Counted from the stretch's first letter, positions 27,689 through 55,500 are shown. The stretch is 64,000 nucleotides of DNA from Stylophora pistillata (GCF_002571385.2 NW_019218153.1:70907-134906), one strand, 5' to 3'. The notes: generated by a model from the letters alone, not told the origin. Numbers and translations are program-made.

Positions 27689-30600
27689 TTAGTCATTTCC
27701 CTCCAACATGTCCTTTACAGTTTGATAAGTGCACCTATCCATCTCAGGACCGATTTCTGCCAGAACGTCATCCACTAAAGCGCGTTGTCTGGGTTGCTGA
27801 GAAATGATCAATTCACCAAAAAGGTAGATACCCATTCCCTGCAAATGGAGACAAAACATGATAAAGCAATTGATAACGTTTAAAAAGTCCCCTTCACCTA
27901 GCTTGGCGGGGACTTGACTTACGCATGAACAGAATTCCGGGTTATTTAAACAATTCAGGTCTTGTCCAGCTTGAAAAGTTTAACCAATTTGTTTTAAAAT
28001 ACTTTTTCAATCATTGCCAATCTTCGCCATCCTTCACCATTCCTGATCCTTACCATTTTATTCTAACACCTTCAGCTTATCTACCCTGGCTAAGGATTAT
28101 TTCATAGCAATCCAATTGACTTGAAAAATAATGATTACAGGTGGAATTCGAGCAGTTTGCCGTAACCAAGACCTATGTAGAGGACCCCGGGGCAAGTGAT
28201 TGGAGACAATTTCAGTAATGTGTTTTAAAAAATCTTTGTTGCCACCTAAGAGTCCTCTTTACAGTTGTGGGCTTGGTGGCCAAGCCTTTGAACAGGAGTG
28301 AGGCTAAAGGTGACCTTGTTATGATACAGCTGTTGCTGCTTTTCAAATGCAAATTTCTTTGTATCATGCTAACTAGATACTGGTCTCTATCACAACAATG
28401 TCACCCCCAGCCTAACTTCGAATCAAAGGCTTGGCAACTAAGTACACAACTGTGAAATGGTCTATTCAGATCAAGAGGTTACAAATGTTGTTCGCAACTT
28501 TGTTCCCAGGGCGTATAATAAATAATAATAAATAATGGACTTATTTAGCGCTATATCCGACTGCTCTATGGCGCTTTACAATACTGAGTTAAAAAGATAA
28601 TGACTACAATTGATTAAAGACAAAATAATTAAGACAAACAATCACATAAAATCACAAAATATTTGAAAAGAAAGCTTTTTCAAAAAGGCAAGTCTTCAGA
28701 CATTTCTTAAAAGCAGCCAAAGAAAAACCAGGCTACGTACAGGCCTGATTTTTTTCAGGTCTGATTTTCGCTATTGCCTAAATAGCGCTATCTACTGCGA
28801 GGATCGTGCATCATACGTATCTAATACCGCAGTTCAAAATATATGAGCTTCACATATTTATTCTATCTCAAAAACCAGGCTGTCTCATATGAATGGGTAG
28901 AGCATTCCACAACCGTGGGGCAGCCACCGCGAAAGCTCTGTCACCATAAGACTTTTGAATAGACCTTGGGACAACCAGAAGAGACTGTTTGGATGACCTG
29001 AGACTACGACTGGGGATATACGGTGTTAGCAAATCACTAAGATAAGAAGGGGCTAAATTATTCAGAGATTTAAAGACCAACAACAAGATCTTAAAAGCAA
29101 TGCGATGCTCTACTGGTAACCAATGGAGCTCCCAAAGTAATGGTGAAGTATGACCAAATTTGGGACAACGCTTAACAAGACGAGCGGCACAGTTCTGTAC
29201 AGACTGTGGCCTCTGAGTCTGGTATTTTGGTAGCCCGTATAAAAGGGCATTCCCATTGTCTAACCTGCGAGTTATAAGAGCTATTGTAGACTCCTCTGAC
29301 AGATAGCTCCTAATTTTGGCGATCTTCCTTAGATGATAAAAAGCCGATTTACATATAGCACCAATATGCTTCTCAAACGTTAGACCATTGTCGAAAACTA
29401 CACCCAAATTACGAGCTGATGTTGATGAATGTACTACGGAACAACCAATTTTAAGAGAAGATAACACGGGACGAGGCCGATACTGAGAACTAATAACAAG
29501 TAGCTCCCATTTGTCGCCGTTCAGCTTAAGCTTATTACAGCACATCCAGTTGACTATCTCACGAGCACAGGCTTCAACCTGAGAAACTGCCAAAGCCTCC
29601 GTATCACGACCCCGGGAATCGAAGGACAAGCACAACTGGGTATCATCGGCATAAAAGTGATAACCCATGTTATACCTTCCAACAATATCCCCGAGTGGTG
29701 AAGTGTGCAGTAAGTAGAGTATGGGACCTAAAACAGACCCCAACAGACACTGGAATCGAGGTTGATCTGTTTGTAATTTGGTAATATCAACTAAGTTGAA
29801 ATTAGATACAATGGATATATGAAGTTCATATATTTTGAACTGCGGTATTAAATACGTATGATGCAGGATCCTTCGCAGTAGATAGCGCTATTTATGCAAT
29901 AGCGCTATTGCGTAAATAGCGCTATCTACTGCGAAGGATCGTGCATCATACGAAAGTTGAAATTGTAAATTGGCCACAGTAAAGGTTTTATAAAACCCAC
30001 ACAACCCACAATTCCTCCACTCGCTCTGAAGAAGGGCTAGCGCTCGAAACATCAGCTCTTAAACACTTTACGGTGGCCAATTTACAATTTCAACTTAGTT
30101 GATATTACCAAATTACCTTGGTACCCCCACCGACGCAGCACCACAGTTTCTTTACAAACTTACTCCCATTATTCATTGATCTATTTGTGTACGGGTAATC
30201 ACCATATTGTAACCTCATAGGAATCACCACGTGATCTGAACTGAGTGACAAGGATGTAAACACGTTGGCCAGATGTACCTTTTGATCTCTACGAAGTGAT
30301 CTGAAACGCCCGACTAAATATTAATTTAAGGATACTACCAGAAATTCAAGAGAGAAAATGTCTTTCGGGTTTTTTTCTACGTACCTGATCCTCTACCAAA
30401 AATTTTTGTACATCTGGTAACCCAGAAGTGTAACTATAACGAGAAAGTAAGGAAATAACTATTTTTAGTAAGAGCGATTATCGAAAAAATCCGGAAGTAT
30501 GTTGGTTTGCTTCCTCTCACTCTATCATTGGTCTGGAAAACTCGCGCCAGACTCAACTAATCAGATGCAAAACGAAAACAACTGCGAATTTGTCACTAGT

Positions 30601-33600: not shown

Positions 33601-36600
33601 TCTACTGTTTTATTCAGGGATCACTCTTAGGGTTGAAATGGTTGAGCCATAAAAGTAGACACGGAACTTGCCTCTGAAGTAACAAGTTGTTCTTTGAAAT
33701 GCTGCACATACTCGAACAAAAACTGATCAAATTCTTCAAGTCCAACCATATTCGCCATGCGATGAAGCAAAAAGTAGCCCTGAAAGGAAACAAGACATGG
33801 TTATACTACCATGCGCTGTTGTACAGCGGTTGTATGTAGTATGGGTTACGAATAGGTTCTCATTGAACACAGTTGTCAAACATTGGGCATGCGCACGGGG
33901 ATCAAATTTGGCCGGCCGCACACTCAAAAAAGGTAAGGTCTGCACTTTTATCAAATGGACCATTCAGCCGGAGTTTATCTCGACTTCTGTAAACATAAAG
34001 CGACTAGGATCACGATAAGGAATATTATCACCTCAAAGCCCCCTCTCCCTCCCCACCCTCCTACTCAAAATTTGATCAAGGCTTCCCTGACATTCGGCTA
34101 GTGTCCACCTATTTTTGCCCGAAACATATTACTCGGCCAGGTCTCGAACCCAGACCTCTCGACCCGTAGTCCAGCACGCTGACCATTACACCGCCGCGTC
34201 ACGGCTTCCGCCACTTTCTGTTCAAATGAATATGAAGCAAACAGGGCACACCTTGAGGTAATGAACTTGTGTCCATTTTTTGGAGCAGATTTGACCGAAC
34301 TGGACCACAGTGTGCGGTTTGATAGATGAAGAATCCGGCTGACAAGAACTCCTCTCAACAGCTTCAGCCACCGAAATAGCTGTGAATCATAAAAGCAAAC
34401 GTCAGTGGGACTGTTGTGAAGGTTGCACTAGCTTCCCTGCGTACCAATCTGGTTTCTCTCTCTTGCTGCTCTTTCAAAAGAAAAAAACCTGTCTTTAAAT
34501 GGGCAATGGCTTGTTCGGAAGCCTCACGGTTCCTTTTACCTCGAGGCTCCAGTCCAATCAAACTATGTATTTATCCAAACATATGCTATATATCATACAT
34601 AATTTTCTTGTAACCTCTTTGTAATGGCATTCTTTCTGAACTATAACAGATTTGTTTGTTGTTAAGAGTTTTTGTTACTTGAACTAAAAGGACAGGCTCT
34701 TACCAGATTTCGGTTTCACGACTTTAGGCCTGTAACGAAAAGAAAACATCCCGTTTTGTTAGCTTTACATCCAAAATTATAGGCTTGTCTTGAATTCTGT
34801 ATTACATCCAAAATTATAGATCTGTCCTGAATTCTGTATCAACGATTTCTTTGTTTCTTAGTGTTACAATATTCAAAGCAAGACGTGTACTTAACTCTTA
34901 CAGCTGCAGGAGCCTACTCCCTCTAAGTCGCCTCCATCCCCCACCCCCAAAATGTACTACCTCGTTTGGCTTGTGCCGCCATTCATGGTGAGGTTTTCGG
35001 AGGTAAAGTCATAGCTGAATCTTCATTTCTAAGTCACTGTTACTTGCCACTCCAGAGATTTTCAGCTGTAAGATTTTCTTACCTCAAACACTTGAGACTG
35101 TCATCACATTCTTTGATTTCAGACAACAAACATCTGTGCCGAAGAATTTGCCTCATTTCTCGAAAAAACCTGTCTTTATCCCTGGACCACTACGGGGGAA
35201 AAAATTGAGCAGAATACAGGTCACACAAATACTGTGTCTTAAAACCTGCTTAGTTGACAGTTTTGTGTACGCTGAAGCGATGGGTGGCAAAAGCACGAGT
35301 GGCTTGAGACTGAAGATACTCGCACCTTCGCAGTTCGCCTCTTAGCGCACACAAACCGTAGATGGTGCACAAAGAACGCAGGCTGACAGTCTCAATGCCC
35401 ATTTAGGGCACTTTACGGTCGCTGTAAAAATACCAATATAAAAAAAAGGTATCAAACCAGAAAGAGAGAGGTGGTTCAAAAAAGCAGACCCACCGGCCAT
35501 TTTACAAAGCGCAGCCAAGAAGGAGAACTTGGGGCAATCAAGAACAAATACAGTGAGTAGCATGGTGAAGGTTTTGGACCCAGGACCCCACCAGTGCCCT
35601 AACCACTCGGTCTCTCCCCAGTTCACTCTCCTTCGTGGTACACATAGGTTACATGTTAACCACTTCTGGGAGTTGAAGGGTTCAGTAAGTAAGTAGGTAA
35701 ATAATTGTAAGTATCCAACCTCCTCTGATTGTAAGTCTCCAAGTGTCGATGAAAGTGGTGAAAATTCACCGCTTCGTATGTCGGCAAATTTCCGTCACTA
35801 CTCACCTCCACTTCGGCTATCAGTGTTGGTGCGTTATTTTTTCAGTGTATGTAAGAAACACGAATTGTGCACGCACCCTCTCAGCCTTTGATTGAATCTT
35901 CTCTTCGACGAACGTGGCGAACCCCTCTGAAAGCCATTCCTCTCTCCAATCCTTGGTGCCAACCAGGAGCCCGAACCAGGCATGCGAGATCTCATGTGCA
36001 AGGCGTACACGCATGCTCGCCTCACCAGAAAGAAGAGACTGGGACAGAAACACCAGATTGGGACTATAAGACCGAAAAAAGATGAATATCTCAAAACTCA
36101 ACTTTGAATTTCAATTGTTTGGAACCTGGATTCAAACTAGTCGGTAAGAATGGAATATACACCAACCTTTTGAGTCCCATGCAAGCGAAACACTTTGGCA
36201 AAACCAACATGTCCAACCTTCTGAATGGAAAAGGACCCAACAACTCGCAGGAAGCTTCTAGAAATTTAGGAGCGTATCCTAGCAACTCCTCTGCCGCCCT
36301 GTCAATCAAACTAGGCGGAGCAAACAAACGACACGTTACCGGCACGTTGGGGTTATCACCATTTTTAGTGTCGGCGGTTCTTGATAGCCGGCACTGCCAC
36401 CACCCCACAGCCAATGCCAGAGTTGAGCAGGGAAGAGGACAATCCATCTCATAGTGGTACGTCACTGAAAAATGATTTTAAAAAAGTTTTTTTTTTTCTA
36501 GAAATTTCACGATACGGAATTTAGTTACACACTTGAGGTATGCTGTTTGGAGTAGATGAGACTTATTTTTACGAATATCTCCGTTAACTTCTGAATTTAA

Positions 36601-39600
36601 AATTCCCAACTATAGCAAAAGTCAACAGCGAAACTTGAACAAAACGTCGCACGAAAGAAACCACCTAACAATCTCATTAAAACTCAAACTGATTAGTCAA
36701 ACGGCACCAACATTTTTGGCGAGTCACCGAGGCAGTAAAGGAAAACCAACGACATTCCGGATCACTTCTGACAAACGTCTCCCATTCAATGGGTTAGCCC
36801 ATTCAATATTTCTGTTTTTAGTGATCGTGCATTGCATATTCGCACCATGTAGCTACCTTTCCGTCTATCAAACTTAAGTTTTGAAGTTATTCGCCTGCAG
36901 TCTGATTCAATCTCCTCGATCCATATTCATTCCCCTTCCCTTTTGATTTATCCTTAATTTTATGGTACTCATCACTTCTGTCAAATATTTTTATACCGGA
37001 ATTAATCTATCTAAAGGCGATTCTCTGTGACGGTATGATTGTTTCTTAAATGTAACGTAGTTGCTTTTAAACCTACCTTTCGTGACGTGGATTATAATGA
37101 CGGCCAACGATATGACTGACCAGGAGCCCCATTTCTCGAATGTCCCGGTGAATTAACGGGCCCGAAGCTATATTTTAGAATCAGAATTTGATTTAAAGAA
37201 TAGAGAAGCATATTGTGGCTTCCTGACCAGTCCATTTTGTTTCTTTAGCTGAAAGTTTTACTGAACAATTTTCAAAACTTTTTAAACCTTCATCTCGAAT
37301 GAAACCAGAACAGCTTTACAGGCCCGACGAGTTACCGGGACGCTCAAGAAAGGGGGCCCAGAAAAGAAAAGAATTGAAGTGTTACCTTGATCACCATTCC
37401 CAGTGGTTTTCCCAACAAACTGATTCCCACTCATTAAGACAACGCAGCCCTCCGGAACGTGGATGGATGCCTGCCATGTTGACATGGCAACAGGAGGCTC
37501 CTGACATGGCATCAGAGAACGATTGTTGATGTAAGCACCGGGCGAGAATACAGAGGGCCTAGTGCAGAGGGAAAATAACACAAGTTCAATTCATTCAATC
37601 TCCTTGAAAAATTCCTGGCTGTTTTACATTTTTTCACAAGATAACAAGGAGTATATGGCGTTATATCAAGACAGGATTCCACCATCTAACTGACCACGTT
37701 GTCTTCTCTGATCAATTGTTCTCTAGATAATGAATTGATCTCATAAGGAGAGGTTACAAATTCTGAATCAGGTCCAGGTTCACGCCTTACTTACTTGCCA
37801 TCTTGATCAGTAGCCCAAGTCAATGACGATCCTTCTGGACTGGTGTGGTATTTAATCCACACACATCTTGGCCACGCCTTGCCAGTTGCTTCAGGTTTCG
37901 AAATCTGTACAAACCAACCATACACTGAATACGACAGGCCCTTAAACGGCAAAGGCGTATGGGATTTGTCGCCAACAATGTTCCCTAAGAAGCCGAGTTG
38001 TACCTCTGAAAAAGACATTTCGGGTGTCAAAAGGCCGCTTTGTTTCTGTCCGCAAAATGTTACCTGGAAATCATCTGGAAGAACAACTTCGCTCACAGAT
38101 TCAATGCTCACCAAGGTACTGTCCAACGTCATTTGAAATTGCTTTTTCGTGACCTCCTCGTTGCGAGGTTCAAGAAATAGCACTATGTTTCCTTTCATAC
38201 TTTTTTCATTGAATTCGACAGACAAGTCAAGAATGTAGTGATACACGAGAACTTCGTCGACGTTTGCCATTAACGGCAGATCGTCGCTTTTATCCCATTT
38301 ACAGCTAATAAATCTTTCATCGTTCCTCCTTCCTTTACAATCAGAATCAGATTCGCTTTTTGTTCTCTTAGTTAGATTTTGAGGTACGTCGCAAACGAAA
38401 TCAGTCAATAGAGGCCTCTTCCCCCCACAACTGCCTTTTCTATCTGCTTTTTCACCAACATTAGTGGCATCATCAGTTTCGACTTCTTTGCACTCCACCT
38501 CATGGTTTCCTTTACAATAATCCGTAAAATTCTGAAGCCATGATTGGAATGACATCTTCATTTGCACTCCATTCGGCAGAGTGCAGGAACTTGTGTCACT
38601 TACGGTTACCGCTGACCTAATCCTATCCTTTTTCTTGTTTTTCTTCTTTTTATCCTTCTTCTTCTTCCTCTTTTCCAGAACTGCATGTTTATCTGCCCCA
38701 CATTTTCCAGGAGACGAGGGAGGAATCGTGGGTGCATTTTCATCCACTATAGTTTCCCCTGAGGTTCCTTCTACCATTGACGTGCTCATGTTCGTAGCAT
38801 CAAAGCTACTAATCGACGATAAATGCTCAGGACGAGGCCCATCCTCAGCTCGGTACATTGTAACTTCTGCATCCTGGGACCCCTCCCCTAGGTTTGCGTC
38901 TGCCCTAACCGGCACAATGGCTGGACTCAGTTTGTTGCAGCATATCACACCTTCCGAATCCTTACGCAAGACATCTTCATAGTTTGTCAGTTCCATTTCT
39001 CCTTTTTCCTCTGTTAAACTCTTACCCTCCCACTCTTGGGTCACGCACGGGTTAGGGCTAACAGCTGTACATGGATCCTTACGAACCATGGATCCTTTTT
39101 CCTTGTGACACAAACCATTGTCTGCTTCTTCAAAAAGCCGAGATTCATCACCAATCGGCTTCATTTCACTTTCGTTCCTCTGTACCGAGACTGTGCTCAT
39201 CCCATCTGAGCCACCGTCCACGAATGGCTCCTGCTGAAAAGGTGCTCCATCTGCCTCCTTCACACACCTGCTTCTCTCCTGACTGTATTCTTCCTCCTCC
39301 TTGAACCCCGCTTCCTCCTCCTTGAACCCCGCTTCCTCCTCCTTGAACCCCGCTTCTTCCTTCTTGAACCCCGCTTCCTCCTCCTTGAACCCCGCATCCT
39401 CCTTGTGTACGGTCGCAGATAAACTGAAAATTGAAGGTGAATTCTCCAAACACGTCGCGCCACATGGTTCCTCAACAAGCCTTTGCTTGTCATGATCTGT
39501 CTTAAAGTTGCCATCTTTTTCCTTTGATGATACTGAATTTTTTCCCAGTGGATAAGTTGCTAACAAATAGTTTGAGGCTGACGATGGAATGCTTTGACTC

Positions 39601-42600
39601 ATGACATCGTCAAGCTCATTTCCTTCAGTAATGGTAATGTTTTCAAGCGAAGACTTATCGCTGTTGTTGAACACTTCCTCAGCTAACGCCTTAGCGCATG
39701 TCACAATGTTAGAACCAGAGCTACATGCATGTACAGCTTTATCTTCAGTTCTCTCTGCACTGGAAGTTGTGGGTGTCTCGCACTGCCACATTTTACGGCC
39801 TTGCTCCTTTCTTACTGTAGTGGGCAGAGTGCTTGGCACATTATTCCCTAAATTGTCGTGAAACGATTGACATGCGTTTTCGTTTGTTGTAGATGTGCAT
39901 ACAATTGAAGGTAACGTTACGTGAGAGGAAGAATCTTCCTCTGGATTGCGCGCTGGGGGTTGGACGTCACTATTGGAAAGACAAGTGGAAACTCCTTTCT
40001 CGTGAACAGATTCCAACTTGTTTCCTCCACTGGAAGTCATGTGGGTAGCTTTCCCAAATGTTTCAATCGTAGATTTGGACTCTACAGGCTTTGGCGCCGC
40101 TGATAACAAATGGAGTCCACACTTTCTACCCAAGCCTGACAAAACGTAGCAAGTCTCCATGTACACTTCTTCCAACGTCCACGATGATAAACCATGTCCA
40201 ACTGGCTTTTTACTGTAAACAGCTAGAAAAGGACAAAGACATACATTATTAACACATGGCAGAAGTCCGAATTCTGTGACAAGGGCCGAAGTCAAAATCG
40301 AGTTCATGAAGTGTTTTTCTGATGCAAAAGCATCTGTTACTAGTTTCATAAGCACCAGCTTCTTTCATACAACAAAAAAGGAAATACCAGTCTTAATAAC
40401 GCCAATTAATTTCATCTTCGCCTTACTTTCGTACATAACCTTACATAGATTAAAACTGGAAAGAAAGCAACCCGTAAAATGGAAGTTGATGCCGTCGGAA
40501 GAGATTCTCGTCCCTTTAGAGTACTTGTTTCCGCAGGCTACTGTTACTTTTTACGTCGGTTGGTCACAAAAAATATTTTAAAAAAACTTTAAGGCTTCGT
40601 TATATTCTTTCTTTTTCTTTCTCGTATCTTTACTCGGGGTGCTTTCATAATTAATGATGGGGGGGGGGGGGTGGTTACTTTAGTTCTGATTTCACGACCC
40701 TGAATTAAAATGGTTACTCCTTTCTCACCTGAGGGAATTCCTTTCCCAGCTAATCGGTTTCCATTCTCCCCAATGGCAAGATGAATCATGTAGAGAAGTA
40801 CTGGGAATGAGGCAGAACAGTCTGCTCTGTTGTCATCTTCTATAAGCCCAGTCACCGCAAGATGTCCGTTACCAGACGTCGTTTCGCTATTTTCCTGGAT
40901 CTCTTTGAGCTTATTTTTCATTACAAAGGCCTGCATAGCTGTAACATGTTGAAAGTGAATTCCATAACAAATATCACCTGTTCTGAGATCGTTCCACTCC
41001 TTGATAAGCTTAATAAGCTCTAAGTTCGGCCTGGAAAACATTGGTCCTATTGCTACGAAGATAACTTTGAGGTTATCATTGGGCAAATGATCTAGATAGT
41101 TCTTCAGTGACTCTTGGATGAGGCAGATTTCACCGACTTTCATGTGGAAAACCATATCCTCGAATTTAACGTCCGAAGCTTTACGCATTCGAAGATTTGC
41201 AACAATAGCGTCAGCCAAGGCAATATACGATCCAAACTGCTTAGAATTGTAAGCCTCTTGGTTTAATGCAGAAGGAAAGTCGTCCTGGACAAGAAAAATG
41301 ACCCTCATAGATGACATGACCAAACCAGGAGGAGTGACCTAGAAATGGGTTAAAAATATATGACGAAGTTATTCTTGCAAAACGAATATAGTTAAAAAGT
41401 AGGACAACAAAGGCCAACATTAACAAGCGATCACATGAAAAATGGCATTCAGAAAGATTTTAAACCCAACATTTCCACGGCCCCGGCAAAATGTAGCCGG
41501 TTTTTCAGCGAGATACAAAAAGTGGGAACGTTATTTCCCTAATCAGAATTTTCTCATTTCGTTGTTGCGTTAAAAGTCTTCTGGTGACACACGCCGCTGC
41601 CTACCAAGATTCCCTCAGAATCTGATCCGTGTAACATGGATAAATATTAGGGTTCCTAACAACAATACTGAATCAAAGATACAGCTGAATTCATCGCCAC
41701 ACCCAATCTCACAAGGTAAAAGCTCTTGCCTGCATTTCTCCATGACAAACAATCTTCCCAAACAGCAGGAAAACGCGAGAAGCCAGGGTGCGATTGTTAT
41801 TAGTTTTGCATCCAATTGGTAGAGAAAATGGCGCGAGTTTTTCTGGACTAATCACGAAGCGGAGACATGCAAAACCAACTAAAAAAAGAATATGACAACA
41901 ATGGTACATGTACCTGATCTTCTTTGCCTTCTGTTGAAAGCCTTTCCTCGACATTATCTCGGCCTAAGAACCCTAATCCCATCTCCCTTGCTAGATCTGG
42001 AAATCCCTCAGCGCATGCTCTGTTCACGGTATCCTTCAGTCTTGTACCACATGTGCCGGTCGTCTTATTGCAAACCATTGTCGAGAGCATCAAATGAAGA
42101 TCAGCAACTTGGGAACCAGTCTCGTAAACTTCTTTTGTACTACCGCAAAGAATGGAGCGAAGTCTTGTCTTCAGCCAATCAGCATCTACGGGCCAATCCT
42201 AAACAGGGAAAAAACGATTTTGCAAACCTATCGAGATTCGTAAACAATAAATACTAGTAATCTGGAAAACTTGAGGATGTTTTGGTAAGTTAAGGAGCAA
42301 TGCATCCAAGCTATCCTTTAAGATAAACTCTGGTGATTTAAATTTCTAGTCTCCAAGCATAAAGGCTGGGACTCATAAGGAATAAAGCAACTAATCTCAA
42401 ACAAACCCCATGCGTACTGTGTTGGAAAGATTTTTCTGGGACACATTTTAACATAGAAAACATTGAACAAATTTAGTAAACCAGGGTTGAATGTGTCCAT
42501 ACTGTTGGGGAGGTTGAAAGCTCTGTTAAAAGAACAAAGATTTTTTTCTCCATGTCACATAAAGGAAATTTCTGCATCAACTAGTCACCATGAGGAGATG

Positions 42601-45600
42601 AATGATCTTTATCCAGTGTTTCCCTCCTTTAATTATCAACAAGAAACTTACCACGTGAGAGCAATCTAATTTTAATGTGAAACAAGATGAGATATGGGTA
42701 GCCATCAGAACATCTTTCAGCACTGTCTGACTAGCCATCACAAAGTCATGGAGAGAACAAAATTCCTCAAATCCACTCTCTTTTCCAATGGCAAATGGAG
42801 TGCATGAGAAAACTTGACCTTGACAACTTGAGTGACAGCTCAATACTGCGACAACTTCAACTGTGAGGAAGCAAACATAAGAAATCCAGTAACAAATTTA
42901 ACTCAAACTGCATAAAAAGCAAACATTTAGTGAAGAAGAATATATTCAAGCCTTTCCAAAGAAAATTAAATATTGTAAATGGCCAAAATTTCTTAATGAT
43001 GAAAAAATTATCATCAAATCAGGGTTGTTAGGTGTTCAATTCTAAAAGAATTGGCATGTGTGGCAATAATTGACATGAAAGGTGGTTGCGTTAAAGAGGT
43101 TAGGAACACTTATGACTGACAAATAGATTCCATGTTGTCTTGTGTCTGTCCAGTTATAGATCCCAGATGAAATGAAAATGTGGCACAAACAAAAGATAGT
43201 CCTCCAAGAGGACATGTGCTCACTGTTATTGGATGGTATACCTAGTTACATTGTGCATGTGACTGCAGAATTGTTATCAGTAAACTTGTTCACAAAATAA
43301 CATTTCCACAATGTGATGTGATCCCAGTAAAAATAAACTTCGGTTGCTAGTTCACTTTCAGTCAATCTCACTTCGGGATCCAGAAGTCTTCAGAAGTTAC
43401 AGACTATCTTTTTTACAACATGATGACATATTGTGTACTGGTCTTGTGCCAGAAAGCACAAAAAGTAGCACACAAGGTGAAGATGTGTGTGTCAATGATG
43501 TTCTTCCCACATTTTCAAGTCATTTGTTATCTGTTACTGTACAGAACCATGGCAATATGGAATTTATCTGTTAGCTGTAAGTGTTCTTTACCTCTACAAA
43601 GCAATCATCTTTCATTCATATTTCAAAAGAATTGTTAATACATTTTTTAGATTTAAATCAATTTGTTAAAACCAATCAAAATAATCCATACATGGCTTAA
43701 TAATTAATAGATACAGCTCTTTTACTTAATAGTTGATACCTGTTGGCCAGTGACTGTTCAAGAATGACAGCTTTGCAATTGACTCCATCAGTTCTTGACG
43801 ACTCACAAAGTTCTGAGTGATGACCATGCAATCATTATTGTGAGTCCCTGGGTTACAGACCAACTAATATCAATAATGCGCAGATCAATTCAAAGCTTTG
43901 ACATCCCCCCCCAACCTGGGGTCACCCACAGGCATTTGACCATTATCCCTGCCTGGGGGGGGAGAGAAATTATGCTGGTGGCTTAAATTTTAAATGAGAC
44001 AGCTCAAAGGTGGTGAATGATTGTAAGTGTGTAACCTCGGAAGTACCCATTGTGCTTTAACAAGCGATCCCTGGCCAGAAAATCCAGCCGAGGATTGCTG
44101 CTTGTTCATCCAGTGAATTTTGCTGGAAGCTGGCAATTAGCAACAACCCTGATTCCCTTCTTGCCTGATTATTTACCTCCAAGTGGCCATGGTTGAAGTT
44201 CAACATGCTACTCACTAGTTCACAAAATGTCTCATTATTAACCATTAAAAGTGTCCAATAATGAACAAGAATCAAAACATGGACATCGCATTTGTATAAA
44301 TTATTTTGGTGAAACTATAGAATAAACCCCCAATTGTGGACTTAATATATAACACTTCACCAAGATCATGGCATTTCATACCTTCAGCCCTAAGAGCAGC
44401 TTTCAGAAACAAGGAAATCCAATCCCCAAACTGAGATTGTGGGTCTTTTAAATTAAACACAGCAAGAACCTAGAGATATATCCAAAGATAAGCTATTCCA
44501 TGATAAAGATATGAAAATTAGTTTGAGCACATTGTATCAAAAAAAAACAAACAAACAAACTAATGAATGAAAGGTATTTAAATTTGTTCTAATCATATCA
44601 CTTGTGATCTACACACATTACTGATTAGAACTAATGAGTAGTCATCTGTTTCCTGGATAACATATTATTTTGTTTCTAACACATCTTAGCGGGCCAAAAT
44701 CTTAAATCCTCAAATTTGACTGGCCAATTGTGTGATCAGACCTAATCTAGCTCTTTGTAATAAAACCCCCAATCCTTTTTGGTCACTCCGAGGAGTTCAG
44801 TGGCTAGAGGGTTAAATTTTGTAAACTAATAGCAGGACAGTGAGAATTGGGGAGTGAACTGATGATATTTAGCATTTAGGTATTTATTTATATACTATAA
44901 TTCACAAAGGTTTCTCATCACTGTGAATTTGCATGTGAAAAACTAAAAACTACAAGAAATAAACAGTGCTATAACGTTGCAAGGAGAAATAAGTAAATGC
45001 ATGAATAATAATAATAATGACAATAATAATAAATATACAAAATCACTGGAGGGAACTAAGATAATTTGTTATAGTAGATTTAAAATCGTCCACAGATGGC
45101 TGGTCTAACAAAAAAGAAGGTAGTGTGTTCCATTCTTTTATAGTTCTGGTAAAGAAGTTATAGACATTACTGTTACTGCCAATGTTAATGAATTTACTGC
45201 TATGGTAGGAGTGTGTAACACGTGTGGGCCACGCTATGTACTTTGGGATATTGACCGCAATTTTTTTCTTCACTATCTTGTACATGGTAGTAAGTCTCGC
45301 AATTTTGGTAAAACATTTTTCTTAACTGCAGCCACACCTTTCTGACTCCATTGGGTAACCATTGCCTCTCAATAAAATCCTTGCTATCAACAAGATGAGA
45401 GTTGCTGAACGGATCATCAGTTCCAGAATCCCTTTCTTTCATGTAATGATGAACTTCTTTGCCCACATGTCTTTCTAGAAATTTTACGTTCTTTATGGTG
45501 TTGAGGAGCCAACAAGGTTTCCCTAGAAGATCAATGGTTAAAATTTTAGGTTAAGTGGTTTTAACTTTGATAGAAACAAATAGAATTCTATCCAAGATGG

Positions 45601-46488
45601 TCTATAGATTTCATTCTAGAATCTTAATGGATTCATCTATCTTTTTATACCCCTTCCCTAGAAACCTTTAAAAGGTGTTCACCTCAGTGGGTAATGTAGT
45701 CTGTTTTGGACAATATAATTTGGATATATCAACAAAGTTGAAATGTTAAATTAGCCACCGTAATGATTACAAAAGCTGACGTTTCGAGCGTTAGCCCTTC
45801 GTCGGAGCAAGGGCTAACACTCGAAACGTCAGCTTTTGTAATCATTACGGTGGCTAATTTACCATTTCAACTTTGTTGATATATCCAAATTATTTCGTTA
45901 CTCCCACCGACACAGCCCCAAACAGTTTCTTTCGAAACTATCAGCCTTTATTCATTTGTGTTTTGGACAATACCTTGTAAAGCTTCTGAATGCTGCTTGC
46001 ATTGTGGAAAGTCGCATCTTATGTATCTTGTGTCTGGAGATGTGTCAAAAGCAAAAACAGTACTGGAGAACCGCGTCAGAAGTTCTTGAGTCTACAGGAC
46101 AACATACAGAAAATTAAACACAAATAATTACCAGGACAAGAAAATGAATGAATCTGAATCACGCAGACAAACAAAAAATGATATGTCTGCTATTATGCAT
46201 AACGAAACGTTCAGATTTCGCTCTGTAGATGACCAGCTATCGTTCTCTACATGCAAATGCCACGGCAGCTGTACCTCAAAGTCACATCACACCTTGATGC
46301 ACTTTAACTTGTGCTTGGTGTTCTCAACAAATTTCATTGATTGGAATTTGACACGTTGATTTTCATTCAATAAAAGATTCAAGTTAGAAGTTACAACTCT
46401 CCATGGACTAAAAAATAAACACGGGAATCCTTACCTTCGTAGCATTGCCGTTATCTTCTCCTTTTGATCTTACTGTTTGGTCCGCCAT
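27689..46488 (-). CDS. AOPEP: Aminopeptidase O (M1 family) with ~1200-aa N-terminal extension, ~1901 aa, 24 exons: 46488-46435, 46091-45974, 45522-45338, 44469-44382, 43847-43740, 42860-42652, 42198-41914, 41338-40729, 40222-37795, 37558-37386, 36464-36167, 36063-35877, 35189-35083, 34562-34540, 34379-34252, 33779-33672, 32999-32956, 32854-32800, 31834-31775, 31659-31576, 31340-31224, 30877-30840, 30433-30385, 27838-27689
   Basis: AOPEP signatures DDLPLMAN..LVYHYILDL, INNRSLMPCQEPPVAMSTWQA, HEISHAWFG...EEWLSEGFAT (HEXXH-X18-E), QVHYLKGYFLL, RHRWCELVVKH, GMGIYLFGELI. Exons total 5706 nt with consistent phases. The AOPEP half is very secure; the first 8 exons are predicted from splice signals and frame continuity only. 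Confidence 0.85.
28515..29743 (-). mobile_element. 5'-truncated L2-type LINE (RT C-terminal half) in the last AOPEP intron
   Basis: GSVLGPILY, FYADDTQL, KLKLNGDK, ARNLGVVFD, LHWLPVEHRIAFK, GDRAFAVAAPRLWNALP; (TTA)n-like 3' tail near 28515-28537. Confidence 0.9.
28735..28869 (+). mobile_element. Short SINE-like 3' fragment inserted in the L2, with 12-bp TSD
   Basis: AAAAACCAGGCT at 28723-28734 and 28870-28881. Related sequence at 29810-29952 and 31873-31912. Confidence 0.8.
29773..30175. mobile_element. Penelope-like terminal remnant with inverted arm and hammerhead-like motif, interrupted by a fold-back SINE-like insert
   Basis: Arm GTAATTTGGTAATATCAACTAAGTTGAAATT is inverted relative to 30086-30117. 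CTGAAGAAGGGCTAGCGCTCGAAACATCAGC at 30026-30056. Near-TSD TTGATCT(G/A)TTT. Inner insert flanked by AAGTTGAAATT (29783-29793, 29954-29964). Confidence 0.7.
33462..33645. repeat. Representative of abundant ~200-bp TTAA-CCCTT (piggyBac-like) MITE families; further copies near 15575, 16660, 17425, 18810, 22580, 47250, 49555, 50890, 51962, 63740
   Basis: Recurrent TTAACCCTT...ATATTCTCTATACTGTTCTCTATACATTTC...GGAGAATTTG...AAGGGTTAA-like sequences in introns of all the multi-exon genes. Confidence 0.75.
39290..39404 (-). repeat. Coding 21-bp minisatellite, ~5.5 units, encoding (EEAGFKE)n in the AOPEP linker
   Basis: TTGAACCCCGC recurs at 39301, 39322, 39343, 39364 and 39385. Confidence 0.95.
45005..45310 (-). 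mobile_element. LINE (CR1/L2-group) 3'-end fragment
   Basis: RLTTMYKIV...TRVTHSYHS...FFTRTIKEWNTLP...DDFKS followed by a (TTA)n tail. Confidence 0.75.
45716..45958. mobile_element. Penelope-like insertion: inverted terminal fragments with hammerhead-like motif, 14-bp TSD
   Basis: ~85-bp inverted arms (45715-45799 / 45809-45893) containing AAGGGCTAACGCTCGAAACGTCAGC. TSD TGTTTTGGACAATA at 45702-45715 and 45959-45972. Confidence 0.85.
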
Positions 46489-52500: not shown

Positions 52501-55500
52501 AAATCCTCCTTGGATAAAAAGAGACAAAGGTGAATTTCTTTTTTATCATGATCATGTTAGAGTAAGTATAAGCACAGCACACAACAGTAAAAGTGTCATT
52601 TGTCTGAGAAAAAAACTATAAGTTAGAAGTTTGTAAAGAACCTTTGAGTTGCAACAGTTGGTAAATGAAAGACCATGCAAACAATTGCAAGCCATTGCAG
52701 CAGGTTGTGCATGTATCCAGTCATATTAACTCTAGTACTGGTTCTTTTCCTGTATAAAGTTGAAATTATGGTGACATGTGCATCTTTGTGATTTTTTTTT
52801 TTTTTTTTTAATGGGTTCACATTTTTACACTCCAGGAAAATTGATGAAATTCATTGATAATGTGTGGAAAGAAATATCAGAAAGAGAAAGACTTCAGCTC
52901 AGCAAAACAGAGGGACAAGTAAGTTAATATTTAGTGTTTGCTGTTGTACTATTAATCATTTTCATTTGAGTCCAAACTAAGTTTATTCAGCAACTCAAAG
53001 GTCTAATGTTTTGCACAAACTGCATATAATTATAGTATGAAACAAAGAACGTTCCATCAAGGGAATAACCATAGTATGCGTGGTAATTTAACATACAAAG
53101 GCATACTACAACTGTCAGTGTTAGGGAACATTAAATCTCAAGATGTTGTATTTCATGTGTTATCCCAGGTCTGGCTTGCTATTCATCAACTCCTTATGAA
53201 TGAAGACTGTCAAAGAAAGTATGAGTTCAACTCCTATAGTAAAGAGCAAATATTAAAGGTAATTAGACAGAAGTTTCTTTTTATTAAGCAAGAACTACAT
53301 TTGGTGCTATGGCAGATCCAGGGGAGGGAGGGGGTGTCTAGCATCCCCCTGCCCCATCCCCCCCCTTAATCAGACCAATGGGTCTTCTTTCACTACCTGT
53401 CTGTCTTTAGGAAACTTTTAAATGATATGTACTTCCAGTAGTATGGTTAATAAGCAGCTTGGTTGAAAGGTGATGCCCGTATTGTTGTGAATGATTTTCT
53501 TGACTGTATTTTCAGCTGCGAGGTTTTATGAATGAAGTTCTTCTGGATCAGATTCCCAGCTTGATAGATCTGCAACGATACCTTGAACAACTGTCCATCA
53601 TGGAGCCACCAGCTATAAAAAAGGACATTATTTTGGAACAGGTAAGTGAATGAATGCATAGGAATGTTAGGCCGTCTTCGCCATAATTTTACGACTCAGA
53701 GTGCCAATGTTGTCTTCATACATACATACATACATACTTTATTTAAGTCGTTAGTGGAACTCTCAGGCCAACAAAGGTGCACCGCGCCAGGAGGATCAAT
53801 AAAGATTCGCAGTCCAAACCTCACAGCAAACACGAACGTAGAAAGTGTAAAAAATTGCGAGGATGGACAACTTCTGACGTAAAAAATATAAAAAATGTTT
53901 TATATTTTTTACGTCAGAAGTTGTCCATCCTCGCAATTTTTTAAACTTTCTACGTTCGTGTTTGCTGTGAGGTTTGGACTGCGAATCTTTATTGATCCTC
54001 CTGGCGCGGTGCACCTTTGTTGGCCTGAGAGTTCCACTAACGACTTAAATAAAGTATGTATGTATGTATGTATGAAGACAACATTGGCACTCTGAGTCGT
54101 AAAATTATGGCGAAGACGGCCTAACATTCCTATGCATTCATTCACTTACCTGTTCCAAAATAATGTCCTTTTTTATAGCTGGTGGCTCCATGATGGACAG
54201 TTGTTCAAGGTATCGTTGCAGATCTATCAAGCTGGGAATCTGATCCAGAAGAACTTCATTCATAAAACCTCGCAGCTGAAAATACAGTCAAGAAAATCAT
54301 TCACAACAATACGGGCATCACCTTTCAACCAAGCTGCTTATTAACCATACTACTGGAAGTACATATCATTTAAAAGTTTCCTAAAGACAGACAGGTAGTG
54401 AAAGAAGACCCATTGGTCTGATTAAGGGGGGGGATGGGGCAGGGGGATGCTAGACACCCCCTNNNNNNNNNNNNNNNNNNNNNNNNNNNNNNNNNNNNNN
54501 NNNNNNNNNNNNNNNNNNNNNNNNNNNNNNNNNNNNNNNNNNNNNNNNNNNNNNNNNNNNNNNNNNNNNNNNNNNNNNNNNNNNNNNNNNNNNNNNNNNN
54601 NNNNNNNNNNNNNNNNNNNNNNNNNNNNNNNNNNNNNNNNNNNNNNNNNNNNNNNNNNNNNNNNNNNNNNNNNNNNNNNNNNNNNNNNNNNNNNNNNNNN
54701 NNNNNNNNNNNNNNNNNNNNNNNNNNNNNNNNNNNNNNNNNNNNNNNNNNNNNNNNNNNNNNNNNNNNNNNNNNNNNNNNNNNNNNNNNNNNNNNNNNNN
54801 NNNNNNNNNNNNNNNNNNNNNNNNNNNNNNNNNNNNNNNNNNNNNNNNNNNNNNNNNNNNNNNNNNNNNNNNNNNNNNNNNNNNNNNNNNNNNNNNNNNN
54901 NNNNNNNNNNNNNNNNNNNNNNNNNNNNNNNNNNNNGTTGGGAGATCAAATTAACACAGTATTTTACGAGATTTGACGTAATAGTATTGTCAGACATATT
55001 TAGATTGAATGTACTGTAAGTTTTTTTATTACACGACTCGGGCAGTCAGAGGGCCAATAACTAAAATCAACCAATCAAAATGCTCTATTGCCGGTCAATA
55101 TTCTCTCAGTATTGGACCGGGCACTGTCCCGAATGGTCCCGAATGATACCGCACTTGTGTCCCTTTGAACTTCAGTCGTATAATAAATCTCTTATTAACC
55201 AAGCTTGCTCGGGACCGTACTGGAAGAATATCGGCCCTCGGTCTTTTTTGTACGGACCTCGCTGCGCTCGGTCCGTACTGTCAAGACCTCGGGCCGATAT
55301 TCTCCCAGTACGGCCCTCGCGCTTGGTTAATAAGATATATGTAATCTGTCTGATGCTTACTTTTCAAATCCAGGTTTTTTTCACTTTCTCTGATCGCCTT
55401 GTTTGTTTGTTTGTTTGTTTGTTTGTTTTTCCTTATTTGTAAAACAAAACTAAGTACAGGTTCCAGAAATCAGAGAAAAACTTTTAAAGGATAATCAAGG

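What the first reader, a model, noticed from the sequence alone, without database searches (positions are those of the whole stretch)
41914..44469. Caspase/CHAT-like (clan CD) domain with candidate His-Cys dyad in the AOPEP extension
Seen after splicing: hydrophobic strand then His (VEVVAVLSCHS, His at 42832-42834). Fifty residues later a strand then Cys (LMATHISSCFTL, Cys at 42682-42684), then SILCGSTKEVYETGSQVADLHLM. Known: caspase-hemoglobinase-fold proteases place His and Cys after successive core strands at about this spacing. From memory, the pattern HxxSCxTL...GxxKxV...S..xDL resembles bacterial CHAT-related DUF6642 proteins. Inference: an unrecognised animal caspase-like endopeptidase tethered to an aminopeptidase, able to self-process or to cut then trim substrates. 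The usual Gly after His is Ser, so activity is uncertain.
Basis: inference. Interest (0 to 1): 0.85.

Follow-up and report, generated by a model that had tools for sequence, protein, structure and literature searches.

The report
Caspase-fold domain on coral aminopeptidase O
In this coral, and in sea anemones and a jellyfish, aminopeptidase O carries an unannotated N-terminal caspase-like domain related to the bacterial DUF6642 family, with the catalytic His and Cys kept, so it is probably a two-protease enzyme, though cutting activity is untested.

Summary

**Gene and expression.** The four exons at 44469-41914 (minus strand) belong to an expressed gene. RNA reads join them, through two more exons, to a coral aminopeptidase O (AOPEP, M1 family).

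**Conservation.** The His codon (42832-42834) and the Cys codon (42682-42684) are 50 residues apart. Both are invariant in about 30 cnidarian sequences, from stony corals to a 1819-aa Aurelia protein named "Aminopeptidase O".

**Fold.** An AlphaFold model of a natural homologue has pLDDT 75-95 over this domain. It shows a six-strand alpha/beta domain with His just after strand 3 and Cys at the end of strand 4. Foldseek and an unbiased VIA-align search both rank caspases, MALT1, metacaspase and SAVED-CHAT first.

**Family.** Pfam finds nothing. A profile-profile comparison with bacterial DUF6642 (PF20347) gives:
- 89% probability, P = 2e-6, over 183 columns;
- His aligned on His and Cys on Cys;
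- score 46, against 13.6 ± 3 for 150 shuffles.

**What it is.** A divergent, intron-bearing, cnidarian DUF6642-like clan-CD-fold domain fused to AOPEP.

**Open points.** Catalysis is untested. The Gly after His, invariant in the 67 bacterial DUF6642 sequences examined, is Ser here. No sequence link to CHAT (PF12770) or caspase (C14) models was found. I found no published description.

The parts
46435..46488 (-). Tentative first coding exon. ATG at 46488 (M-A-D-Q-T...). Two in-phase GT donors are possible: after 46474, or after 46435.
   Evidence: Sequence. The homologues P0017 and P0093 also begin M-A-D/N. No read evidence was obtained for this exon.
45974..46091 (-). Exon 2. Conserved N-terminal segment (S-T-V-F ... 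R-Y-I-R-C-D-F-P-Q-C-x-x-H).
   Evidence: ORF and splice sites. Aligns with residues 9-33 of P0093, which are invariant in A4.
45338..45522 (-). Exon 3. Conserved helical segment that precedes the caspase-fold domain.
   Evidence: Homologous to P0017 and P0093.
44382..44469 (-). Exon A. Strand 1 (V-F-N-L-K-D) and helix 1 of the caspase-fold domain.
   Evidence: Stranded RNA depth. Corresponds to model strand 116-123 and helix 130-145 of P0015. Colinear with the I-F-C-L-E-G-D-W start of DUF6642.
43740..43847 (-). Exon B. Strand 2 and helix 2.
   Evidence: RNA depth. Transcript-derived P0033 and P0041 join it directly to exon C.
42652..42860 (-). Exon C. Strand 3 plus the candidate catalytic His (42834-42832), a Cys-rich loop, helix 3, and strand 4 plus the candidate catalytic Cys (42684-42682).
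   Evidence: His and Cys kept in every homologue that covers them. RNA depth with empty flanking introns. hhalign places His on His and Cys on Cys of DUF6642. Single copy in this genome.
41914..42198 (-). Exon D. Strand 5, the G-S-x-K-E-V-Y-E-T-G-S-Q-x-A-D-L helix, the F-P-D-L-A-x-E-M-G-L motif and strand 6. This is the end of the caspase-fold domain.
   Evidence: 42 homologous exon fragments. Matches DUF6642 profile positions 127-181. The D->E junction is seen in 8 RNA reads.
40729..41338 (-). Exon E. A second conserved alpha/beta domain of unknown family (203 codons).
   Evidence: 16 homologues among 1.84 billion representatives. AlphaFold pLDDT 80, pTM 0.80. Only generic three-layer alpha/beta matches. 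The E->F junction is seen in 3+4 reads.
37795..40222 (-). Exon F, one open frame of 808 codons. It holds a short conserved segment, about 585 residues of Ser/Glu/Lys-rich linker, and then the start of the AOPEP homology (D-D-L-P-L-M-A-N at 38285). The linker has E-E-A-G-F-K repeats near 39395 and a Lys-rich stretch near 38672.
   Evidence: The same order of parts is seen in the 1819-aa Aurelia protein P0093.
35862..36005 (-). M1 peptidase exon with the H-E-I-S-H zinc motif of AOPEP.
   Evidence: PF01433, 46.3 bits, E 7e-10, at G000:C369:106768-106911. ORF translation.

Best explanation
Exons 44469-41914 encode a caspase-hemoglobinase-fold (clan-CD-like) domain of about 230 residues. It is a divergent, intron-bearing, cnidarian relative of the small stand-alone bacterial DUF6642 proteins.

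**Order of parts along the polypeptide.**
- a conserved leader of about 100 residues;
- the caspase-fold domain;
- a second alpha/beta domain of unknown family;
- a disordered linker of about 585 residues;
- the M1 zinc aminopeptidase AOPEP.

**Shown.**
- The exon structure and its expression.
- The fusion to AOPEP.
- The fold of a homologue's model.
- Homology to DUF6642.
- Invariance and canonical placement of His and Cys.

**Inferred.**
- His (42834-42832) and Cys (42684-42682) form a working thiol-protease dyad.
- The protein then pairs an endopeptidase with an exopeptidase. The endopeptidase either cuts substrates whose new N-termini the tethered aminopeptidase trims, or cuts the protein's own linker to release or activate AOPEP.
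- A conserved acidic residue just after strand 1 (D in V-F-N-L-K/R-D, E or D in DUF6642) hints at a basic P1 preference. This is speculation.

**My odds.**
- Clan-CD fold and DUF6642 homology: about 0.85-0.9.
- Part of the AOPEP polypeptide: about 0.9.
- Catalytically active: about 0.5-0.55.
For: **Gene model and fusion.**
- GT..AG sites and matching phases.
- RNA junctions D->E (8 reads) and E->F (3+4 reads), plus strand-specific depth on exons A-C with empty introns.
- Exon F is one 808-codon frame that runs into the AOPEP N-terminus.
- The M1 HExxH exon lies downstream.
- The Aurelia protein P0093 (1819 aa, named Aminopeptidase O) and the Actinostola protein P0017 (881 aa, PF01433 + PF09127) carry the same N-terminal module.

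**Conservation.**
- His and Cys are invariant in the exon-C fragments that cover them and in P0015, P0017 and P0093.

**Fold.**
- AlphaFold model of P0015: pLDDT 75-95 over residues 110-340, with a beta-alpha pattern of six strands. His190 lies two residues after strand 3. Cys240 lies at the end of strand 4.
- Foldseek against PDB: caspase-11, -3, -4 and -8, MALT1, CED-3, C11 and SAVED-CHAT, probability 0.96-1.0.
- VIA-align second look: SAVED-CHAT Z 10.4 (rmsd 3.4, 163 aligned), MALT1 9.6, caspases 9.0-9.6.
- Unbiased VIA search of 48,161 chains: ranks 1-8 are all clan CD.

**Family.**
- ESM Atlas lead to DUF6642/CHAT clusters, score 0.92-0.93.
- hhalign of the N-module alignment against 67 DUF6642 sequences: 89% probability, P 2.2e-6, score 46.1, 183 columns, His on His and Cys on Cys.
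- 150 column shuffles: mean 13.6, sd 3.0, max 24. The reversed alignment scored 10.4.
- The unrelated exon-E domain scores only 21.7.
- An HMM of DUF6642 hits P0093 with P about 4e-5 and touches exons A to D in colinear order.
- The independent tool run (A4 against A7) gave P 3.2e-4 over the C-terminal half.
- His, the following Gly, and Cys are 67/67 in DUF6642.
Against: - No biochemical data exist.
- The residue after His is Ser in every cnidarian sequence. It is Gly in 67/67 DUF6642 sequences, in the CHAT sequences fetched here, and (from general knowledge) in most clan CD proteases.
- Pfam models (DUF6642, CHAT, Peptidase_C14) give no hit even at E <= 10.
- The PDB sequence search gives nothing.
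- VIA Z scores of 9-10 are only about 1 above periplasmic-binding-protein-like folds (8.8-8.9). The unrelated exon-E domain also reaches Z 8.2 to SAVED-CHAT. So the structural match alone is not decisive.
- The model rests on a shallow alignment of 51 rows, nearly all from corals and sea anemones.
- The model was made for a homologue, not for this coral's own spliced protein.
- The His-Cys distance was not measured.
- The loop between His and helix 3 is about 13 residues longer than in DUF6642. It holds conserved Cys and His residues that could bind a metal instead.
Confidence: 0.6

Rival explanations
1. The domain has the caspase/DUF6642 fold but is a pseudo-protease. It would serve as a binding, scaffolding or regulatory module for AOPEP, for example docking substrates or partners. 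His and Cys would be kept for structure or for metal binding.
For: - His-Ser replaces the His-Gly that is invariant in DUF6642.
- Extra conserved Cys and His residues lie in the loop after the His (invariant columns C173, C184, C199, H202 of P0093).
- That loop has lower model confidence (pLDDT 55-69).
- Inactive caspase-fold domains exist: the c-FLIP protease-like domain is among the top structural matches (Z 8.9).
Against: - Both dyad residues are invariant over the anthozoan-scyphozoan split.
- They align exactly with the invariant pair of the bacterial family.
- Pseudo-enzymes usually lose at least one of them.
- Ser keeps a backbone NH for an oxyanion hole.
Confidence: 0.3
2. It is a generic three-layer alpha/beta domain (periplasmic-binding-protein-like or flavodoxin-like) with no evolutionary link to clan CD. 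The His and Cys positions would be coincidence.
For: - PBP-like and receptor ligand-binding domains score Z 8.0-8.9, close to the caspases.
- There is no Pfam or PDB sequence hit.
- hhalign against CHAT gives P = 0.37.
Against: - The profile-profile match to DUF6642 covers the whole domain and pairs both catalytic residues. It lies far outside the shuffle controls.
- Foldseek probabilities near 1.0 are specific to caspases.
- The DUF6642 profile's only PDB hit at E <= 10 is a caspase, aligned at the H-G motif (E 0.36).
- DUF6642 against CHAT aligns H-G and S-x-C correctly, though weakly (P 0.0065).
Confidence: 0.07
3. The caspase-fold exons belong to a separate upstream gene. The join to AOPEP would be read-through or an annotation artefact.
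For: - P0015 transcripts (629 aa) stop after the second domain.
- Internal Met codons in exon F could start an AOPEP-only product.
- No single read or contig spans the whole gene.
Against: - Spliced RNA reads link D->E->F.
- Exon F has no stop for 808 codons up to and into AOPEP.
- Independent gene models in Aurelia and Actinostola carry both parts.
Confidence: 0.03

Closest known systems
DUF6642 (Pfam PF20347), bacterial stand-alone proteins of about 190 aa
   Same: - Colinear over the whole domain.
- Strand 1 ends in an acidic residue, then G-x-W.
- His follows strand 3 and S-C ends strand 4 (I-H-F-S-S-C against H-I-S-S-C).
- The G-Y-x-x-x-V-D-W-x-x-S-x-x-F-D helix matches G-S-x-K-E-V-Y-E-T-G-S-Q-x-A-D.
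- The terminal P-D-L-x-x-x-L-G-F motif matches F-P-D-L-A-x-E-M-G-L.
   Different: - About 19% identity, and the Pfam model does not detect it.
- Ser instead of the invariant Gly after His.
- About 13 extra residues between His and Cys.
- Split by introns and fused to other domains in an animal.
- DUF6642 itself is uncharacterised. It is rare: 2 of 301 Planctomycetota and 0 of 401 Pseudomonadota genomes sampled. It has no conserved gene neighbour.
CHAT proteases (PF12770), including SAVED-CHAT (PDB 8tl0) and the TPR-CHAT genes of this same coral genome
   Same: - Best structural match: Z 10.4 in the second look, 9.7 in the unbiased search.
- Same His/Cys topology.
- Some DUF6642 cluster members are auto-annotated as CHAT.
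   Different: - No sequence-level relation (hhalign P 0.37; Pfam none).
- Much smaller than the 289-position CHAT model.
- No TPR or SAVED sensor.
Caspases, paracaspase and metacaspase (family C14)
   Same: - Six-strand alpha/beta fold.
- After the His comes G-x-V-F-S-x-T, which resembles the caspase H-G-x-x-G-x-I-x-G-x-D loop.
- G-S-Q-x-A-D-L resembles the caspase G-S-W-F-I helix start (my reading of the sequences, unquantified).
- Foldseek probability up to 1.0.
   Different: - No Q-A-C-x-G pentapeptide and no Arg/Gln S1 residues.
- No Pfam C14 hit.
- No evidence for an inter-subunit linker or for dimerisation.
Vertebrate aminopeptidase O (AOPEP, M1 family)
   Same: The downstream exons encode the AOPEP N-terminal motif, the M1 HExxH domain and the leukotriene-A4-hydrolase-like C-terminal domain.
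   Different: From my own knowledge, human AOPEP (819 aa) begins at the point that here lies after more than 1100 residues of extension. The caspase-fold module, the second domain and the long linker were seen here only in cnidarian sequences.

Membership tests
Clan CD (caspase-hemoglobinase fold) cysteine peptidases | Alpha/beta/alpha sandwich with a six-stranded sheet that matches solved clan CD structures over the whole domain. | tested here: met
   AlphaFold model of homologue P0015, residues 110-340, pLDDT 75-95. Foldseek probability 0.96-1.0 to caspases, MALT1 and SAVED-CHAT. Ranks 1-8 of the unbiased VIA search are all clan CD, Z 8.9-9.7. Caveats: the margin over PBP-like folds is only about 1 Z, and the strand order was not read from coordinates.
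Clan CD (caspase-hemoglobinase fold) cysteine peptidases | Catalytic His directly after strand 3 and catalytic Cys directly after strand 4, both conserved. | tested here: met
   His190 lies two residues after strand 182-188. Cys240 lies at the end of strand 232-242. Both are invariant in about 30 cnidarian sequences. Spatial distance was not measured.
Clan CD (caspase-hemoglobinase fold) cysteine peptidases | Small Gly after the catalytic His (H-G). | tested here: not met
   C-H-S-S in all cnidarian sequences. H-G in 67/67 DUF6642 sequences.
Clan CD (caspase-hemoglobinase fold) cysteine peptidases | Cys-dependent peptide-bond hydrolysis. | not testable with these tools
   Needs expression and assay.
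DUF6642 (PF20347) | Score above the Pfam gathering threshold (27 bits). | tested here: not met
   No hit at E <= 10 for P0015, or at E <= 1 for P0093, P0017 and the window exons. A six-frame search of the genome found only chance hits elsewhere.
DUF6642 (PF20347) | Homology over the full domain length, with the family's invariant His and Cys aligned. | tested here: met
   hhalign: 89% probability, P 2.2e-6, 183 columns. Shuffles: mean 13.6 ± 3.0, max 24, against 46.1. hmmsearch: P about 4e-5. Tool hhalign: P 3.2e-4 for the C-terminal half.
DUF6642 (PF20347) | Stand-alone single-domain protein of about 190 aa. | tested here: not met
   Here it is one module of a multi-exon protein of at least 1800 aa.
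CHAT (PF12770) | Sequence match to the CHAT profile. | tested here: not met
   Pfam found none. hhalign against 18 CHAT domains gave P 0.37, and the alignment was misplaced.
Caspase family C14 (PF00656) | Profile match and the Q-A-C-x-G active-site pentapeptide. | tested here: not met
   No Pfam hit. The sequence around the Cys is S-S-C-F-T.
Aminopeptidase O / M1 family (host gene) | M1 catalytic domain with HExxH, plus the Leuk-A4-hydro_C domain, downstream on the same strand and the same transcript. | tested here: met
   PF01433 exon at 35862-36005. H-E-I-S-H in the ORF. Junction reads link the upstream exons to exon F. P0093 and P0017 carry PF01433 and PF09127. The C-terminal domain of the window gene itself was read only from ORFs.

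The most novel reading that the evidence does not exclude
Before the anthozoan-medusozoan split, cnidarians took up a DUF6642-type thiol protease, a family otherwise seen here only in bacteria. They welded it to aminopeptidase O. The result is a single-chain enzyme that cuts internally and then trims the new N-terminus, or that frees its own aminopeptidase by self-cleavage. This would be the first eukaryotic and the first functionally tractable member of DUF6642.

A bolder, low-odds extension concerns the unidentified enzyme behind the 'unorthodox' N-terminal processing of cnidarian neuropeptide precursors. That enzyme has been proposed to be either an aminopeptidase or an endoproteinase (PMC9545775). 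This protein could be a candidate. However, it has no visible signal peptide, which argues against that.
Probability: 0.35. Interest if true: 0.78.

Novelty: new variant of a known kind. Interest (0 to 1): 0.63.

Why it matters
**New domain architecture.** Clan CD proteases (caspases, paracaspases, metacaspases, separase, legumain, CHAT) are central to cell death, immunity and protein maturation. A further animal lineage of this fold, fused to an M1 aminopeptidase, is a domain architecture for which I found no published description.

**A handle on two poorly understood proteins.**
- DUF6642 is a bacterial family with no known function.
- AOPEP has a poorly understood cellular role. From my own knowledge, loss of AOPEP causes a human dystonia.

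**Concrete experiments.** If the domain is active, the coral, anemone and jellyfish proteins are a natural endo-plus-exopeptidase tandem. A Cys-to-Ala mutant, tests of self-cleavage, and P1 specificity profiling would all be informative.

**Annotation.** Current family models miss this domain entirely, so it is probably unannotated in cnidarian proteomes.

Tried and rejected
- **Pfam on single exons and on the long homologues:** nothing.
- **ESM Atlas on exon D alone:** score 0.82, at chance level.
- **PDB sequence search with the cnidarian profile:** nothing meaningful.
- **First alignment A1:** it misplaced the exon-E fragments and the leader exons, so it was dropped. A2 still misplaced two rows. 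A3 was used.
- **The search for related loci with A3:** With A4, 50 pattern matches were found in bacterial genomes, but none was a relative.
- **Pfam DUF6642 search in five arbitrary bacterial genomes and in 401 Pseudomonadota:** none. The order around one positive genome added none.
- **Conserved neighbours of bacterial DUF6642 genes:** none across 35 loci.
- **hhalign of the N-module against CHAT:** no relation.
- **hhalign of the exon-E domain against DUF6642, the N-module and CHAT:** no relation. This served as a negative control.
- **A weak DUF6642 hit elsewhere in the coral genome (C2211):** chance.
- **Fold of the exon-E domain:** only generic alpha/beta matches.
- **Rfam on the odd read pile-up at 44000-44150:** nothing. 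It turned out to be an interspersed repeat.
- **Literature:** no paper on DUF6642, and none on a caspase-like part of AOPEP.
- Natural full-length homologues (P0015, P0017, P0093) were used instead. The window exons entered alignments only as separate rows.

Full report
**1. Setting**

The window is G000:C369:70907-134906 of a 398-Mb genome. Sequencing-run labels identify it as a coral. The finding lies on the minus strand, inside a multi-exon gene.

**2. Observation**

- Translating 42858-42652 (-) gives E-V-V-A-V-L-S-C-H-S ... T-H-I-S-S-C-F-T-L.
- The His codon is 42834-42832 and the Cys codon is 42684-42682. They are 50 residues apart.
- 42198-41914 (-) gives D-W-P-V-D ... S-I-L-C-G-S-T-K-E-V-Y-E-T-G-S-Q-V-A-D-L-H-L-M.
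Two small corrections apply: exon D starts at 42198, and exon B starts at 43847.

**3. Gene model**

From GT..AG sites, matching phases and homology, the exons are:

| Exon | Coordinates (minus strand) | Note |
|---|---|---|
| 1 | ATG at 46488 | donor after 46474 or after 46435; tentative |
| 2 | 46091-45974 | |
| 3 | 45522-45338 | |
| A | 44469-44382 | |
| B | 43847-43740 | |
| C | 42860-42652 | |
| D | 42198-41914 | |
| E | 41338-40729 | |
| F | 40222-37795 | |

- Exon F is one open frame of 808 codons.
- After a Ser/Glu/Lys-rich linker of about 585 residues, exon F runs into D-D-L-P-L-M-A-N-V-D-E-V-L-V-Y-H-Y. From my own knowledge this is the N-terminal signature of aminopeptidase O.
- Further exons continue with P-S-V-F-S-P-G-A-Y-I-N-N-R-S-L-M-P-C-Q-E-P-P.
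- The M1 zinc motif H-E-I-S-H lies in the PF01433 hit at 35862-36005.

**4. Expression**

- Two raw-read RNA-seq runs of the same species give spliced reads for D->E (8 reads) and for E->F (3 and 4 reads). Both introns have GT..AG ends on the minus strand.
- Strand-specific depth is seen on exons A, B, C, D, E and F. The intron bins beside exon C read zero.
- Junctions that touch exon C stayed below the tool's 3-read listing threshold.
- Transcript-derived proteins from other cnidarians cover those junctions. P0033 and P0041 join exon B to exon C. P0015 joins exons C and D; the gene-model proteins P0017 and P0093 read through the same junction.
- Exon C is single-copy in this genome.

**5. Relatives**

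- A search of 1.84 billion representative proteins with exon E found only 16 hits. One of them is the 629-aa transcript product P0015.
- P0015 led to P0017, an 881-aa protein of the sea anemone Actinostola. It carries Peptidase_M1 and Leuk-A4-hydro_C behind the same N-terminal module.
- A cluster look-up gave P0093, an 1819-aa protein whose source label (GoldUCD) I take to be an Aurelia jellyfish genome. Its source names it "Aminopeptidase O". It has the full order of parts: leader, His/Cys domain, exon-E-like domain, long linker, AOPEP.
- Exon-level searches found 26 homologues of exon C and 42 of exon D.
- Every sequence that covers them keeps L-S-C/T-H-S-S, Q-G-Q-V-F-S-C-T-P, F-E-E-F-C-S and H-I/F/L-S-S-C-F. 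His and Cys are invariant.

**6. Fold**

I folded the natural homologue P0015, using an alignment in which the window exons and the fragments are separate rows (A3).

- *Model.* Residues 110-340 have pLDDT 75-95. Their pattern is strand-helix-strand-helix-strand(His)-helix-strand(Cys)-helix-strand-helices-strand. His190 lies two residues after strand 3. Cys240 lies at the end of strand 4.
- *Foldseek against PDB.* Caspase-11, -3, -4 and -8, MALT1, CED-3, drICE, a C11 protease and SAVED-CHAT come out with probabilities 0.96-1.0 (E 3e-4 to 5e-3; TM-score normalised to target 0.43-0.53).
- *VIA-align second look.* SAVED-CHAT Z 10.4 (rmsd 3.4 Å, 163 aligned), MALT1 9.6, caspases 9.0-9.6, all over model residues 111-329.
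- *Unbiased VIA search of 48,161 chains.* Eight clan CD proteins rank first: SAVED-CHAT 9.7, Dronc 9.5, MALT1 9.1, caspase-4 9.1, a chain of entry 4jj7 (titled caspase-3-specific peptides) 9.0, metacaspase-4 8.9, c-FLIP 8.9, and a chain of entry 4pry (titled caspase-8-specific peptides) 8.9. Periplasmic-binding-protein-like folds follow at 8.8-8.9.

The margin is small. The structural evidence is therefore good but not decisive on its own.

**7. Family**

- *Pfam.* It sees nothing in the module.
- *Lead.* An ESM-Atlas feature search with P0093 residues 95-345 returned bacterial proteins of about 200 aa at 0.92-0.93. Twelve of the 30 hits were in DUF6642 (PF20347)/CHAT clusters. I treated this as a lead to test.
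- *Collecting DUF6642 sequences.* I obtained two DUF6642 genes from Planctomycetota genomes. I obtained 80 more from metagenomes, of which 67 distinct sequences were used.
- *Resemblance by eye.* The following motifs correspond (left: DUF6642; right: cnidarian module):
  - A-F-H-G / S-C-H-S
  - I-I-H-F-S-S-C-G-T / T-H-I-S-S-C-F-T
  - G-Y-T-E-S-V-D-W-L-E-S-A-A-F-D-L / G-S-T-K-E-V-Y-E-T-G-S-Q-V-A-D-L
  - Y-P-D-L-V-R-R-L-G-F / F-P-D-L-A-R-E-M-G-L
- *hhalign.* The cnidarian alignment against the DUF6642 alignment gives 89% probability, P 2.2e-6 and score 46.1 over 183 columns. It covers DUF6642 positions 4-190 and pairs His with His and Cys with Cys.
- *Controls.*
  - 150 column shuffles of the DUF6642 alignment: mean 13.6, sd 3.0, max 24.
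  - The reversed alignment: 10.4.
  - The unrelated exon-E domain: 21.7.
- *HMM.* A DUF6642 HMM scores P0093 at P about 4e-5. It touches exons A, B, C and D in colinear order.
- *Second tool.* The session's own hhalign tool, run on cruder alignments, gives P 3.2e-4 for the C-terminal half.
- *Invariant residues.* In DUF6642 the His, the next Gly and the Cys are 67/67.
- *Links from DUF6642 to better-known families are weaker.*
  - Against 18 CHAT domains: P 0.0065, with H-G and S-x-C correctly paired.
  - Its only PDB hit at E <= 10 is an ancestral caspase-3/6/7, aligned at the H-G motif (E 0.36).
  - The cnidarian module itself shows no sequence relation to CHAT (P 0.37).

**8. What it is**

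It is a divergent, intron-bearing, cnidarian member, in the wide sense, of the DUF6642 lineage. It has the caspase-hemoglobinase fold and forms the N-terminal module of cnidarian AOPEP. It fails strict Pfam membership of DUF6642, CHAT and C14.

**9. How it probably works (inference)**

- The invariant His/Cys pair sits at the canonical positions and is shared with a bacterial family in which both residues are invariant. The simplest reading is a working thiol endopeptidase.
- It is tethered by a long flexible linker to a zinc aminopeptidase. It could create N-termini that the aminopeptidase trims. It could also cut the linker to release or regulate AOPEP.
- Against activity: the residue after His is Ser, not the otherwise near-universal Gly. 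The loop after His is about 13 residues longer than in DUF6642. That loop carries conserved Cys and His residues of unknown role.
- I put activity at about 0.5-0.55, and the pseudo-protease alternative at about 0.3.

**10. Origin**

There it is sporadic:
- 2 of 301 Planctomycetota genomes;
- 0 of 401 Pseudomonadota genomes;
- 1 of 40 genomes in the order of one positive genome;
- no conserved neighbour.

The cnidarian module has several introns. It is shared by Anthozoa and a scyphozoan, so it predates their split. An ancient transfer from bacteria is plausible but untested.

**11. Novelty**

Full-text searches found no paper on DUF6642. They found none that links AOPEP to a caspase-like domain.

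A review notes that the enzyme behind the unusual N-terminal processing of cnidarian neuropeptide precursors is unknown. It says the enzyme could be an aminopeptidase or an endoproteinase (PMC9545775). The protein here has no obvious signal peptide, so I rate that link as unlikely. It is testable.

**12. Verdict**

- Catalysis is open.
- I class the finding as a new variant of a known kind and rate its interest at 0.63.

Noticed in passing
window 41338-40729 (-), exon E: A second conserved domain of 203 residues, with motifs S-D-V, K-V-F-F-V-x-L-G, Y-G-x-H-F-Q and F-P-V-L-L-Y-x-I-H-L-A-x-G-E-N-G. It has only 16 relatives among 1.84 billion representatives. AlphaFold gives pLDDT 80 and pTM 0.80. 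Only generic three-layer alpha/beta matches appear (flavodoxin, dehydroquinase, PBP, alpha/beta-hydrolase; Z up to 9.6). There is no Pfam family and no relation to DUF6642. Its function is unknown.
   Followed up: yes
window 46091-45338 (-), exons 2-3: A conserved leader of about 100 residues lies ahead of the caspase-fold domain. It has a C-x10-C-x4-C-x2-H pattern in the Aurelia, Actinostola and P0015 proteins. In this coral the first Cys is Phe. It may be a zinc knuckle, or it may not. Model confidence is low to middling.
   Followed up: partly
window 40040-38290 (-), inside exon F: A disordered linker of about 585 residues, rich in Ser, Glu and Lys. It has tandem E-E-A-G-F-K heptad-like repeats near 39395 and a K-R-K-K-K-K-D-K-K-K-K stretch near 38672 that looks like a nuclear or nucleolar targeting signal.
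   Followed up: no
window 43990-44160: RNA reads on both strands, with loose ends and an 84-base skip, pile up here in the intron between exons A and B. The stretch is an interspersed repeat of about 150 bp, with at least 40 copies at 76-83% identity across the genome. Rfam finds no family.
   Followed up: yes
window 45046-45321 (-) and 28871-29887 (-): Retroelement remnants. The first is a short ORF ending in the F-F-x-R-T-I-K-E-W-N-x-L-P tail typical of reverse-transcriptase elements, inside an intron. The second is a 339-aa reverse-transcriptase-like ORF (Y-A-D-D-T-Q) near the 3' part of the gene.
   Followed up: no
window 42860-42700 (-), loop after the His: The stretch between the His and helix 3 is about 13 residues longer than in DUF6642. 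It holds conserved Cys/His positions (S-C-H, F-S-C-T-P, F-C-S-x-H). One otherwise conserved Cys (M-A-C-Q in other corals) is Ser in this coral. A possible metal site; unexplained.
   Followed up: partly
L233 and L234 (Logan transcript contigs carrying P0015): In one unidentified cnidarian the assembled transcript ends the reading frame after the second domain (629 aa, hydrophobic tail). More than 1 kb of further sequence follows. This is either a retained intron or a genuine short isoform without AOPEP.
   Followed up: partly
window ~54453-54950: A run of N (part of 737 N in the window).
   Followed up: no
L122:46-1470 (+), beside a bacterial DUF6642 gene: The upstream neighbour of one Planctomycetota DUF6642 gene is a 474-aa protein. 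Its C-terminus looks like a nuclease or DUF3883-type domain of defence-island helicases (my impression only). No neighbour is conserved across 35 DUF6642 loci.
   Followed up: partly
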